Part shown: positions 7,739 through 7,979 of the stretch, piece after piece
Numbering within the stretch: position 1 is the stretch's first letter
How the letters are laid out: each line of letters starts with the position of its first letter
Assembly (NCBI GenBank): GCA_002269645.1
Contig: NIVC01002182.1
Coordinates: 67,493-86,822 of the forward strand
DNA: 19,330 nucleotides
Direction of reading: 5' to 3'
DNA from: Macrostomum lignano
Taxonomy: Eukaryota
The notes under the pieces: generated by a model
The model's input: only the letters and a program-made list of their open reading frames with translations
What the model was told of the DNA's origin: nothing
Database searches by the model: none
Made by a program: the position numbers and the translations under genes

Positions 7739-7979
7739 TACTTTAATTCCGAGACCATTACATCATATAATGGGTGGTTAGACGAAGGTCGGAACTCAGG
7801 ATAATGGGTGGGGGCACTCGTGCATTGAATTCAGCAACACCATAGACACTCGTGCGCTACGCGCACTCGTGATCTAGGCGTTGCTGAATTTAGCACACTC
7901 GTGCCCCCACCCATTATCCTGAGTTCCGACCTTCGTCTAACCACCCATTATATGATGTAATGGTCTCGGAATTAAAGTA
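7739..7979. repeat. 241-bp foldback palindrome
   Basis: 7739-7817 and 7901-7979 are perfect 79-bp inverted arms. An imperfect inner stem closes on GCGCTACGCGC. Confidence 0.97.

What the first reader, a model, noticed from the sequence alone, without database searches (positions are those of the whole stretch)
7739..7979. Foldback whose asymmetries favour a stable bottom-strand ssDNA hairpin (attC-like logic)
Seen: the arms are perfectly inverted for 79 bp, yet CACTCGTG keeps the same orientation in both arms (7815, 7847, 7864, 7896). The folded top strand therefore has two TC/TC mismatches, while the bottom strand has two 5'-CGAG-3' tandem G.A pairs and a GC-GTA-GC apex. Known: Py-GA-Pu tandem sheared pairs and GNA triloops are unusually stable in ssDNA, and integron attC sites and IS200/IS605 ends are recognised as strand-specific hairpins. 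Inference: the site is read as folded single-stranded or cruciform DNA, with the mismatches setting orientation.
Basis: partly seen in the sequence, partly recalled or inferred. Interest (0 to 1): 0.72.

Follow-up and report, generated by a model that had tools for sequence, protein, structure and literature searches.

The report
Directional palindromic junction of recombinase-linked repeats
The 241-base foldback is real and its odd same-direction CACTCGTG motifs are a conserved feature, but it is best read as one of several palindromic junction sites of a repeat family that sits with Crypton-type tyrosine-recombinase genes in an animal-like genome, not as a proven single-strand hairpin site like an integron attC.

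Summary
Arms 7739-7857 and 7861-7979 flank a TAC loop. The outer 79 bp are perfect, and four CACTCGTG copies all point the same way.

The window is eukaryote-like and rich in transposons. The foldback is the leftmost of several related junctions between 7.3 and 16.4 kb.
- Its apex recurs at 16327-16358 with the TC/TC asymmetry kept and one compensated stem pair.
- 10367-10403 carries the cores as direct tandem repeats with no hairpin partner.

A DUF3504/QRICH1 (CryptonA-like) tyrosine-recombinase gene lies among these junctions. Beside a flatworm homologue I found a terminal foldback with the same plan: TC, short stem, 3-nt loop, stem, TC.

Best reading (confidence about 0.45): CACTCGTG is the directional core of recombination or terminal sites, most simply read as duplex DNA like a loxP or FRT spacer. 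Reading as folded single strands is not excluded but has no specific support. Membership of attC or IS200/IS605 is not met. Moderately interesting: a new variant of a known kind.

The parts
7739..7857 (.). Left arm of the foldback (119 nt). The outer 79 nt are perfectly inverted; the inner 40 nt have diverged.
7858..7860 (.). Apex loop: TAC on the top strand, GTA on the bottom strand.
7861..7979 (.). Right arm of the foldback (119 nt).
7815..7822 (+). Outer core 1, CACTCGTG. The perfect inverted repeat ends at its CAC (7817).
7847..7854 (+). Inner core 2, CACTCGTG, preceded by CCATAGA.
7864..7871 (+). Inner core 3, CACTCGTG, preceded by CGCTACGCG.
7896..7903 (+). Outer core 4, CACTCGTG. The perfect inverted repeat resumes at its GTG (7901).
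7840..7871 (+). Apex module CCATAGA-CACTCGTG-CGC-TAC-GCG-CACTCGTG, shared at 94% with 16327-16358.
8011..8094 (+). Third, solo copy of the inner 84 nt of the right arm (100% identical), with cores at 8019 and 8051.
7286..7693 (.). About 81-bp tandem repeats. Each unit carries a degenerate arm (GGATAATATGGATGG...) and a core-like GCGAGTGCG next to a C-run, in the opposite orientation.
10367..10507 (+). Junction D: three tandem 12-13-nt units CGCGCACTCG(CA/CTA/TG), then an arm TTTGGCCATTATTTCAG.... The left palindrome arm survives only as ATGGTAGATTG.
15403..15496 (.). Junction C: 47-nt arms, 98% palindrome, centre CACGAGTGC|GCACTCGTG, with no TC/TC asymmetry and no TAC loop.
16327..16369 (+). 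Junction B: CCATAGA-CACTCGCG-CGC-TAC-GCG-CGCTCGTG-TTTTGGCCATT. TC/TC is kept and a T:A to C:G change in the stem is compensated.
11046..12398 (-). DUF3504/QRICH1-domain tyrosine-recombinase-like gene (CryptonA type). It lies inside the 5-kb unit bounded by junctions D and C. A stretch around residues 306-335 departs from the family consensus, probably through a local frameshift pair.
12942..13553 (+). N-terminal fragment of a second, diverged QRICH1/DUF3504-type gene. It matches a second gene in the flatworm locus L008 (5946-6419).
7840..16334 (.). Field of 15 CCATAGAC motifs (0.36 expected) that marks the extent of the repeat family. The first copy lies in the foldback's left arm.

Best explanation
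The foldback is one of several palindromic junction sites of a repeat family that occupies roughly 7.3-16.4 kb of this eukaryote-like window. The family lies together with CryptonA-type (DUF3504/QRICH1) tyrosine-recombinase genes.

The 8-bp near-palindrome CAC-TC-GTG (variants CRCTCGYG) is the conserved core of these sites. Its central TC is the only part that is not symmetric, so it gives an otherwise symmetric site a direction. The spacers of loxP, FRT and dif do the same job.

Inferred mechanism: recombinase subunits bind the inverted arms (the CCATAGA / TTTATGG / CCATTAT motifs). Strand exchange happens within the core. Only cores aligned in the same direction give productive products. Integration at a core then leaves one core on each side of the insert, in direct orientation. 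That explains why all four cores of the foldback point the same way, why sequence partners change at or close to the cores, and why units sit end to end in an array.

Shown here: the anatomy, the recurrence of the module, the conserved asymmetry, and the neighbourhood of recombinase genes in two or three species. Inferred: that the recombinase acts on these sites, that it reads them as duplex DNA, and where it cuts.
For: 1. The core is 19-fold over-represented (9 observed, 0.47 expected).
2. The apex module recurs at 16327-16358 at 94% identity, between different arms, with TC/TC kept and one compensated stem pair. A scan for the plan 'NN, stem, loop, stem, same NN' finds only these two sites in the window.
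3. Similarity between copies starts or stops at or within about 9 nt of the cores.
   - The 79-bp perfect arms end at the TC of the outer cores.
   - The similarity between junctions A and B ends at the last base of core 3.
   - The arms at 10392-10507 and 15449-15568 both start at a core.
4. The prefix CTACGCG-CACTCGTG is followed by two different arm types: ATCTAGG at 7864 and 8019, and TTTGGCC / TTTTGGCC at 10396 and 16351. This mosaic is what exchange at a core would give.
5. Cores also occur as plain direct tandem repeats with no inverted partner at 10367-10403. That speaks for recognition of sequence rather than of a hairpin.
6. A DUF3504/QRICH1 recombinase-like gene lies in the unit bounded by two junctions (Pfam DUF3504 6e-17). 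The motifs LRGG, SLRKT and GHS...Y are invariant across eight homologues.
7. I reached flatworm locus L008 only through the protein. It has 72-nt inverted repeats (90%) around a 4.9-kb unit that holds the homologous gene. Its right end is a foldback whose centre reads CCC-TC-GGGCC-TCA-GGCCC-TC-GTG-ATTTATG on one strand. That is the same plan, and the same CTCGTG-(A)TTTATG start of the arm as in the window.
8. The closest homologue's contig, L005, has a 58-nt-arm foldback with a 3-nt loop 170 nt from the gene, bounded by CCATAGAC.
9. CCATAGAC is enriched near the gene in four sources.
10. Published work describes short direct repeats at Crypton ends as recombination substrates, and typical tyrosine-recombinase sites as inverted arms around a 6-8-bp spacer (PMC3212892).
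Against: - No copies from the source genome outside the window could be fetched, so the sample is four junctions here plus two loci elsewhere.
- In the flatworm the gene moves as a 1.8-kb unit without palindromes. Only one of six copies lies next to them, so the recombinase and the palindromes are separable and the link could be a target preference or chance.
- The window's recombinase copy looks locally frameshifted.
- No simple site of the form arm, core, arm was found.
- The two inner cores are 17 bp apart and the outer ones 32 bp from them, which is not a standard tyrosine-recombinase site layout.
- Some similarity breakpoints lie 8-9 nt outside a core (7855/7856).
- Some degenerate cores point the other way: 15441, 9862, and those in the 81-bp repeats.
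- Kojima and Jurka found no terminal repeats in animal Cryptons.
Confidence: 0.45

Rival explanations
1. The site works as folded single-stranded or extruded cruciform DNA. The strand carrying two tandem sheared G.A pairs (5'-CGAG-3' against 5'-CGAG-3') forms the recognised hairpin. The mismatches choose the strand and orientation, as extrahelical bases do in integron attC sites and as in the folded CTX phage attachment site.
For: - The same-strand TC...TC (GA...GA) around a short perfect stem with a 3-nt loop is kept in junction B and in the flatworm foldback, although the stem sequence differs. So the structure is conserved rather than the sequence.
- The GA strand is computed to be more stable in every intact case: by 0.9 to 3.0 kcal/mol in the window and by 2.2 in L008.
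- A tyrosine recombinase, the enzyme class that acts on attC, is encoded nearby.
- Units separated by imperfect palindromes resemble a cassette array.
- Partly deleted arms (10360, L008 6727-6755) and the perfected centre at 15441-15458 look like products of hairpin or cruciform processing in vivo. This is my inference.
Against:
- Cores occur without any inverted partner (10367-10403, 8011-8094).
- The strand difference is 2-3% of the total folding energy.
- The GNA triloop is not conserved (TGA in L008).
- A symmetric protein dimer on duplex DNA predicts the same co-variation of the two halves, so structure conservation does not discriminate.
- No R/L boxes or extrahelical single bases, no IntI-type integrase and no HUH enzyme were found.
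Confidence: 0.13
2. The foldback is a non-autonomous terminal-inverted-repeat transposon (a foldback or MITE type), or two abutting ends of such elements, moved by a DDE transposase that is not in the window. CACTCGTG is simply part of the terminal repeat, and the recombinase genes are unrelated neighbours in a transposon-rich region.
For: - The unit 15450-16344 has about 28-bp inverted ends: GCGCRC-(TC/GA)-GTGTYTATGGCCATT.
- The unit 10392-15450 has 48-nt inverted ends at 85%.
- The foldback starts and ends with TA, and TA lies between abutting ends at 7858 and 16345.
- Subterminal short repeats (CCATTAT, CCATAGAC) are typical of many DNA transposons.
- The core begins CAC, like CACTA or Transib-type ends (from my own knowledge).
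- Five of six flatworm recombinase-gene copies have no palindrome nearby.
Against: - The only DDE gene in the window is a mariner with its own unrelated 39-nt inverted repeats.
- No target-site duplication can be shown.
- A plain inverted repeat does not explain why exactly the two central bases are flipped back in two junctions here and in a flatworm.
- Finding a homologous foldback by walking from the recombinase protein alone would be a coincidence.
Confidence: 0.17
3. The foldback and the adjoining 81-bp repeats belong to the neighbouring virus-like element (1-7173). They would be its terminal repeat, a duplex copy of a hairpin end, or a replication origin.
For: - The block starts about 110 nt after the last virus-like open reading frame.
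- A palindrome next to tandem repeats resembles the ends or origins of several large DNA viruses (from my own knowledge).
- Imperfect palindromes are what a replicated hairpin end looks like.
Against: - Relatives of the virus-like genes (L003, L004) carry none of the motifs.
- Three scans of the viral collection with the apex and arm sequences found nothing.
- The apex module and the CCATAGAC field extend rightwards into the recombinase-gene region, not leftwards into the virus-like genes.
- There is no mirror-image virus sequence to the right of the foldback.
Confidence: 0.07
4. The site has no function. It is a decaying palindrome or satellite produced by inverted duplication and replication slippage, and the pattern in the cores is a by-product of mutation and gene conversion.
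For: - The region is full of degenerate, truncated and nested copies.
- The only stem difference between junctions A and B is a CpG-type transition on each arm, a kind of change that is common.
Against: - After an inverted duplication, four specific transversions would be needed to restore the same core in both arms while 79 bp stay perfect. I estimate roughly 1e-5 at the divergence of the inner region.
- The same feature recurs in a second junction and in another phylum.
Confidence: 0.1

Closest known systems
Crypton DNA transposons, CryptonA group (DUF3504 tyrosine recombinase; Goodwin 2003; Kojima and Jurka 2011, PMC3212892)
   Same: The gene at 11046-12398 has the DUF3504 and QRICH1 domains of CryptonA proteins and of the host genes derived from them. 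Its flatworm homologue is a multi-copy 1.8-kb unit without inverted ends and with short matching bases at the boundaries, as described for Cryptons. The model of a circular intermediate recombining at a short shared sequence fits cores in direct orientation.
   Different: Animal Cryptons were reported to have no terminal repeats. Here, and in one flatworm locus, the genes lie in units bounded by long palindromic sites with a conserved 8-bp asymmetric core. The palindromes are not part of the 1.8-kb mobile unit in five of six flatworm copies.
Duplex tyrosine-recombinase sites with an asymmetric spacer (loxP, FRT, dif)
   Same: Inverted arms flank a 6-8-bp region whose asymmetry alone sets direction. 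CACTCGTG is 8 bp and symmetric except for its central TC. In junction B the arms AATGGCCATAGA and TTTTGGCCATT are 11-12-nt inverted repeats.
   Different: No single site of the form arm, core, arm is present. The intact junctions have two cores separated by a 6-bp stem and 3-nt loop, and the foldback has four. The arms run to 47-119 nt. No cleavage positions are known.
Integron attC sites (bottom-strand hairpins recombined by IntI; PMC2727003)
   Same: These are imperfect palindromes of 60-140 nt that separate units in an array. Their structure is conserved more than their sequence. Interruptions of the stem distinguish the two strands, and a tyrosine recombinase is the enzyme.
   Different: There are no R''/L''/L'/R' boxes, no single extrahelical bases and no unpaired central spacer near the base of the stem. 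The conserved part here is at the apex, not at the outer ends. There is no IntI-type integrase and no attI or promoter platform, and the context is eukaryotic. One related junction is fully symmetric.
IS200/IS605 and IS91/Helitron-type single-strand transposons
   Same: They have subterminal hairpins and the same strand is used at both ends. Same-strand CTCG at both ends would fit cleavage of a single strand.
   Different: No HUH (Y1 or Rep) gene appears among the window's large open reading frames. The hairpins of those elements are short and subterminal, not a 241-bp foldback. There are no TC...CTRR ends.
Foldback transposons and palindromic MITEs
   Same: The element is almost entirely two long inverted arms. 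Tandem subrepeats lie next to it and TA is at both outer ends.
   Different: The internal module is shared with non-foldback junctions. No target duplication or matching transposase is evident.

Membership tests
Integron attC site | Conserved outer boxes R'' (RYYYAAC) and R' (GTTRRRY), with L''/L' boxes inside them | tested here: not met
   The outer ends of the foldback read TACTTTAATTCCGAG / CTCGGAATTAAAGTA. There is no AAC/GTT pair there. The conserved sequence is at the apex instead.
Integron attC site | Two or three single extrahelical bases on one arm, plus an unpaired central spacer between the R and L boxes (PMC2727003) | tested here: not met
   The stem interruptions are two symmetric 2x2 TC/TC (GA/GA) loops, a CAT/TGC block, one A/G mismatch and two single-base bulges near the apex. 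The positions and kinds differ from attC.
Integron attC site | IntI-type integrase with an attI site and promoter platform next to the array | tested here: not met
   The only tyrosine-recombinase-like genes are DUF3504/QRICH1 type, and the context is eukaryote-like (mariner, microsatellites).
Integron attC site | Only the folded bottom strand is recombined | not testable with these tools
   This needs strand-specific delivery or in vitro assays.
IS200/IS605 ends | A Y1 HUH transposase (TnpA) is encoded in the element | tested here: not met
   None of the ten large open reading frames scanned against Pfam or the nine scanned against PHROGs is of that kind. Smaller frames were not scanned.
IS200/IS605 ends | Short imperfect subterminal hairpins at both ends on the same strand, with tetranucleotide cleavage sites nearby | tested here: inconclusive
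   Same-strand CTCG is present at both ends of the units. But the structures are long junction palindromes, and cleavage sites are unknown.
Crypton (CryptonA) transposon | Encodes a tyrosine recombinase of the DUF3504 type | tested here: met
   Pfam DUF3504 at 6.4e-17 (62.5 bits, cut-off 29.7) and QRICH1 at 6.4e-8 (33.1 bits, cut-off 30.8), with a weak Phage_integrase match. Homologues at 42-56% identity carry the same domains. R207, R341, H364 and Y372 are invariant.
Crypton (CryptonA) transposon | No long terminal repeats; short (4-6 bp) direct repeats or microhomology at the ends; multi-copy | tested here: inconclusive
   The flatworm 1.8-kb unit fits: six copies at 97-99% with no inverted ends. 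In the window only one gene copy is present, and it lies in a unit bounded by palindromic junctions. Its own boundaries could not be set.
Crypton (CryptonA) transposon | The foldback and core are the recombination substrate of that recombinase | not testable with these tools
   I have co-location only. Testing it needs biochemistry or insertion polymorphism data.
loxP/FRT-type duplex site | Two inverted 11-13-bp arms directly flanking one 6-8-bp asymmetric spacer | tested here: inconclusive
   The half-sites AATGGCCATAGA-CACTCGCG and CGCTCGTG-TTTTGGCCATT exist at 16320-16369. However, they are separated by CGCTACGCG, and no undivided site was found in the window.
Foldback / MITE (DDE) transposon | Target-site duplication of fixed length flanking the inverted ends | tested here: inconclusive
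   TA lies at both outer ends of the foldback and AC just outside. Both are too short to be evidence, and no empty site is available.

The most novel reading that the evidence does not exclude
An animal tyrosine-recombinase system in which units are exchanged at long imperfect palindromes read as folded or cruciform DNA. A conserved pair of tandem mismatches (sheared G.A on one strand, T/C on the other) around a mini-hairpin would select the strand and the direction. This would be a eukaryotic counterpart of integron attC cassette arrays, conserved from flatworms to the window's host.
Probability: 0.1. Interest if true: 0.85.

Novelty: new variant of a known kind. Interest (0 to 1): 0.45.

Why it matters
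Cryptons and the host genes derived from them (ZMYM2-4, QRICH1, KCTD1) are widespread, but the DNA sites of the animal elements are unknown. The standard description says animal Cryptons have no terminal repeats.

This work points to a conserved, directional 8-bp core inside palindromic junctions, found next to such genes in two or three distant species. That gives a concrete candidate substrate for biochemical testing, and a search pattern for annotating these elements.

If the sites turn out to be read as folded DNA, it would be the first eukaryotic analogue of attC-type recombination. If not, this is a fairly ordinary though neat example of spacer-type asymmetry in a transposon-rich region.

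Tried and rejected
- Rfam gave no hits, at gathering thresholds on the whole window and at E<=1 on 7200-8300. No tRNA genes were found.
- Three scans of the viral collection (apex, arm start, foldback arm) found nothing.
Its flanks are unrelated. I treat it as chance or convergence, because a palindrome halves the information content.
- The source genome is not in the protein or contig collections. An exact look-up of a window protein failed, and no 100% hit appeared. Other genomic copies of the foldback could therefore not be aligned.
- Relatives of the virus-like genes (L003, L004) carry no core, no CCATAGAC and no foldback. I therefore gave the virus-end reading low weight.
- Five more flatworm gene copies were fetched in the hope of finding more palindromes. 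None had one.
- I considered Helitron ends (a GC hairpin followed by CTAG at 7874) and rejected them: there is no Rep/helicase gene, no 5' TC end and no A|T target.
- I noted a recalled likeness to phage N15 telomere-resolvase sites (CCCATTAT next to a CG-rich centre). I did not pursue it, as it rests on a match from memory of fewer than 10 nt.
- Literature searches for the motif and for Cryptons in Macrostomum found nothing.

Full report
**1. The observation**

The sequence at 7739-7979 is a 241-nt foldback. Its arms are 7739-7857 and 7861-7979, 88% complementary, with the 3-nt loop TAC between them. An explicit alignment of the left arm to the reverse complement of the right arm shows 79 perfect outer pairs, the last being 7817 with 7901. 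The inner 40 nt contain:
- the two TC-versus-GA dinucleotides;
- a CAT/TGC block;
- G/A and A/G mismatches;
- two single-base indels.

CACTCGTG lies on the + strand at 7815, 7847, 7864 and 7896. In the whole window it occurs 9 times against 0.47 expected. As single-stranded DNA, the top strand folds at -123.6 kcal/mol and the bottom strand at -126.6. Shuffles give about -27.

The strand difference is small: 3 kcal/mol overall and 2.7 for the apex alone.

**2. Context**

The window is not prokaryotic in character. Its main features:
- a mariner-type transposase at 8610-9974, with 39-nt inverted repeats at 8545-8583 and 9818-9856;
- a long (TCTG)n microsatellite at 17710-18599;
- a DUF3504/QRICH1 tyrosine-recombinase-like gene at 11046-12398, the CryptonA type;
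- a second QRICH1-like fragment at 12942-13553.

The left 7.2 kb is a virus-like module. It holds a Pox_A32-type packaging ATPase, a double-jelly-roll capsid gene interrupted by one in-frame stop, and a second capsid-like gene. Relatives at 56-75% identity lie on short metagenome contigs.

**3. The foldback is not alone**

- The inner 84 nt of its right arm recur, 100% identical, at 8011-8094.
- The 81-bp tandem repeats at 7286-7693 are degenerate relatives of the arms.
- The apex module CCATAGA-CACTCGTG-CGC-TAC-GCG-CACTCGTG recurs at 16327-16358 (94%). There it reads CCATAGA-CACTCGCG-CGC-TAC-GCG-CGCTCGTG. The TC stays on the same strand in both halves, and a T:A pair of the stem has become C:G. 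The arms around it are a different type (GGCCATTATTT...).
- At 10367-10403 the core forms three direct tandem units, CGCGCACTCG(CA/CTA/TG), followed by that same arm type.
- At 15403-15496 two such arms abut as a 98% palindrome with the centre CACGAGTGC|GCACTCGTG. It has no TAC loop and no asymmetry.
- The arms at 10392-10507 and 15449-15568 are direct repeats 5057 bp apart. They enclose the recombinase gene.
- The 895-bp unit 15450-16344 has about 28-bp inverted ends that differ systematically only in TC versus GA.
- The 8-mer CCATAGAC, which sits directly left of core 2 in the foldback, occurs 15 times (0.36 expected), all between 7840 and 16334.

**4. Evidence from elsewhere**

The source genome is not in the collections. 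An exact protein look-up and two protein searches gave no identical protein. Viral scans were empty. The one metagenome scan hit a single high-GC bacterial locus with the exact 25-mer of junction B but unrelated flanks. I set that aside as chance or convergence.

Walking from the recombinase protein was more useful.

*Macrostomum lignano, locus L008.* The homologue here is 42% identical.
- It lies in a 4.9-kb unit bounded by 72-nt inverted repeats (6756-6827 and 11598-11669, 90%).
- The right end is a foldback (11600-11660 and 11662-11722).
- The left end is a foldback that has lost the inner part of one arm.
- On one strand the centre reads CCC-TC-GGGCC-TCA-GGCCC-TC-GTG, followed by ATTTATG.
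- The plan is therefore the same as in the window: same-strand TC, a short perfect stem, a 3-nt loop, the stem, then TC. The arm also starts the same way, CTCGTG-(A)TTTATG. The stem sequence is different.

*Contig L005.* This carries the closest homologue (56% identical). It has a foldback with 58-nt arms and a 3-nt loop, 170 nt from the gene and bounded by an inverted pair of CCATAGAC.

*CCATAGAC enrichment.* The motif is enriched around the gene in L005-L008. In the flatworm it also forms tandem arrays nearby.

*Evidence against a tight link.* Six flatworm gene copies share only a 1.8-kb unit without inverted ends, as expected for a Crypton. Only L008 has the palindromes.

**5. Interpretation**

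The asymmetry is not chance. An inverted duplication would invert the cores. Restoring them would take four specific transversions while 79 bp remain perfect, and the same feature is seen at 16327 and in a flatworm.

What it means is less certain. The simplest account treats CAC-TC-GTG as a directional core of recombination or terminal sites, read as duplex DNA. Four points favour this:
- it is 8 bp and symmetric except at its centre, like a loxP or FRT spacer;
- sequence partners change at or close to the cores;
- the perfect arms stop exactly at the TC;
- cores occur as direct repeats flanking segments, and even as a plain tandem array without any hairpin partner.

Integration at a core would leave one core on each side in direct orientation. 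Published accounts of Cryptons, with short direct repeats as recombination substrates and a circular intermediate, fit this reading. Those same accounts report no terminal repeats in animal Cryptons (PMC3212892; PMC13465315).

The conserved plan with a variable stem, the more stable GA strand, and the signs of palindrome processing (deleted arms, a perfected centre) are all compatible with it. None of them discriminates, because a symmetric protein dimer on duplex DNA predicts the same co-variation. The defining features of attC (PMC2727003) and of IS200/IS605 are absent.

**6. Rivals**

- A DDE-type foldback or MITE element is the main rival. Inverted ends, TA at the ends and subterminal repeats favour it. 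No matching transposase is present, and a plain inverted repeat does not explain the flipped central bases.
- A role as an end or origin of the neighbouring virus-like element is unlikely. Its relatives lack the motifs, and the motif field extends away from it.
- Neutral decay is unlikely for the reasons given in section 5.

**7. Verdict**

I rate the finding a new variant of a known kind: directional sites associated with Crypton-type tyrosine recombinases. Interest is moderate. The main limit is the sample size, which is four junctions in the window and two loci elsewhere. The census and the assays listed under next steps would settle it.

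Noticed in passing
window 1-7173: Partial virus-like (Polinton-like or adintovirus-like) gene module. It holds a Pox_A32-type packaging ATPase (2076-3035, minus strand) and a double-jelly-roll capsid gene split by one in-frame stop (4755-5630 plus 5658-6041), which matches a single 422-aa gene in L003. It also holds a second capsid-like gene (6062-6925). Relatives at 56-75% identity lie on short ENA and Logan contigs. Gene order differs from L003: the homologue of L003 2915-3571 lies at 1327-2062 on the other strand.
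   Followed up: partly
window 1289-1890 and 1889-2501: Tandem duplication of about 600 bp at 79% identity inside the virus-like module. It duplicates a coiled-coil-like open reading frame.
   Followed up: no
window 2920-3044: Six copies of a 21-nt tandem repeat encode a repeated MTHLSPE-type heptad at the N-terminus of the ATPase open reading frame. The true start is probably downstream.
   Followed up: no
window 8545-9856: Mariner-type element with 39-nt inverted repeats (90%) and a TA on each side. It is inserted into a degenerate arm of the repeat family: GGCCATGTTAC-TA-...-TA-CATACACGAGCGCG, with a minus-oriented core variant at 9862-9869. A second mariner transposase fragment lies at 18552-18963.
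   Followed up: partly
window 17710-18599: (TCTG)n microsatellite of about 890 bp.
   Followed up: no
L001 2697-2721 and L002 1458-1482 (JGI metagenome contigs, 72% GC): An exact 25-nt match to junction B (CACTCGCGCGCTACGCGCGCTCGTG) lies in a bacterial intergenic region. It includes the TC/TC mismatches and the TAC loop, and sits inside a larger inverted structure flanked by GGGACTAGG repeats. The flanks are unrelated to the window. Probably chance or convergence, but unexplained.
   Followed up: partly
L011 10340-11336; L012 1805-2406; L008 4017-9900; L005 147-2150: CCATAGAC recurs around DUF3504 genes in several species. In Macrostomum lignano it is the constant part of two different tandem repeats, with periods of 83 nt and about 31 nt. 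It may be a protein-binding site. No literature mention was found.
   Followed up: partly
L008 9778-9849 compared with L011 6713-6783 and L012 6815/6816: Inside the flatworm 1.8-kb Crypton-like unit, a 72-nt segment flanked by ATGGAAAAGTAA / TTATTTTCCAT is inverted in one copy and precisely absent in another. This suggests a small invertible or excisable segment.
   Followed up: no
window 10728-10837 compared with L005 262-371 and L007 28-127: A 110-nt non-coding block is conserved at 81-83% between species whose recombinase proteins are only 53-56% identical. It lies downstream of the gene in the window but upstream of it in L005 and L007. That is a permutation, as expected for a circular or tandem form. 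It contains repeated GTCCTCGG units, again centred on CTCG.
   Followed up: partly
window about 11380-11590 (residues about 306-335 of the 450-aa protein): The recombinase-like protein departs from the family consensus (WYQN.PLGRHTLD...) over about 25 residues. The conserved residues appear in another frame, so this copy probably carries a compensated frameshift pair and may be inactive.
   Followed up: partly
L005 2041-2159: Foldback with 58-nt arms (83% complementary) and a 3-nt loop, 170 nt downstream of the closest homologue of the window's recombinase gene. Its outer ends are an inverted CCATAGAC pair. It does not have the TC/TC plan.
   Followed up: partly
window 12739-12808 and 14176-14245: 70-nt inverted repeats (86%) enclose the second QRICH1-like gene fragment. 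They may mark another nested or invertible segment.
   Followed up: no
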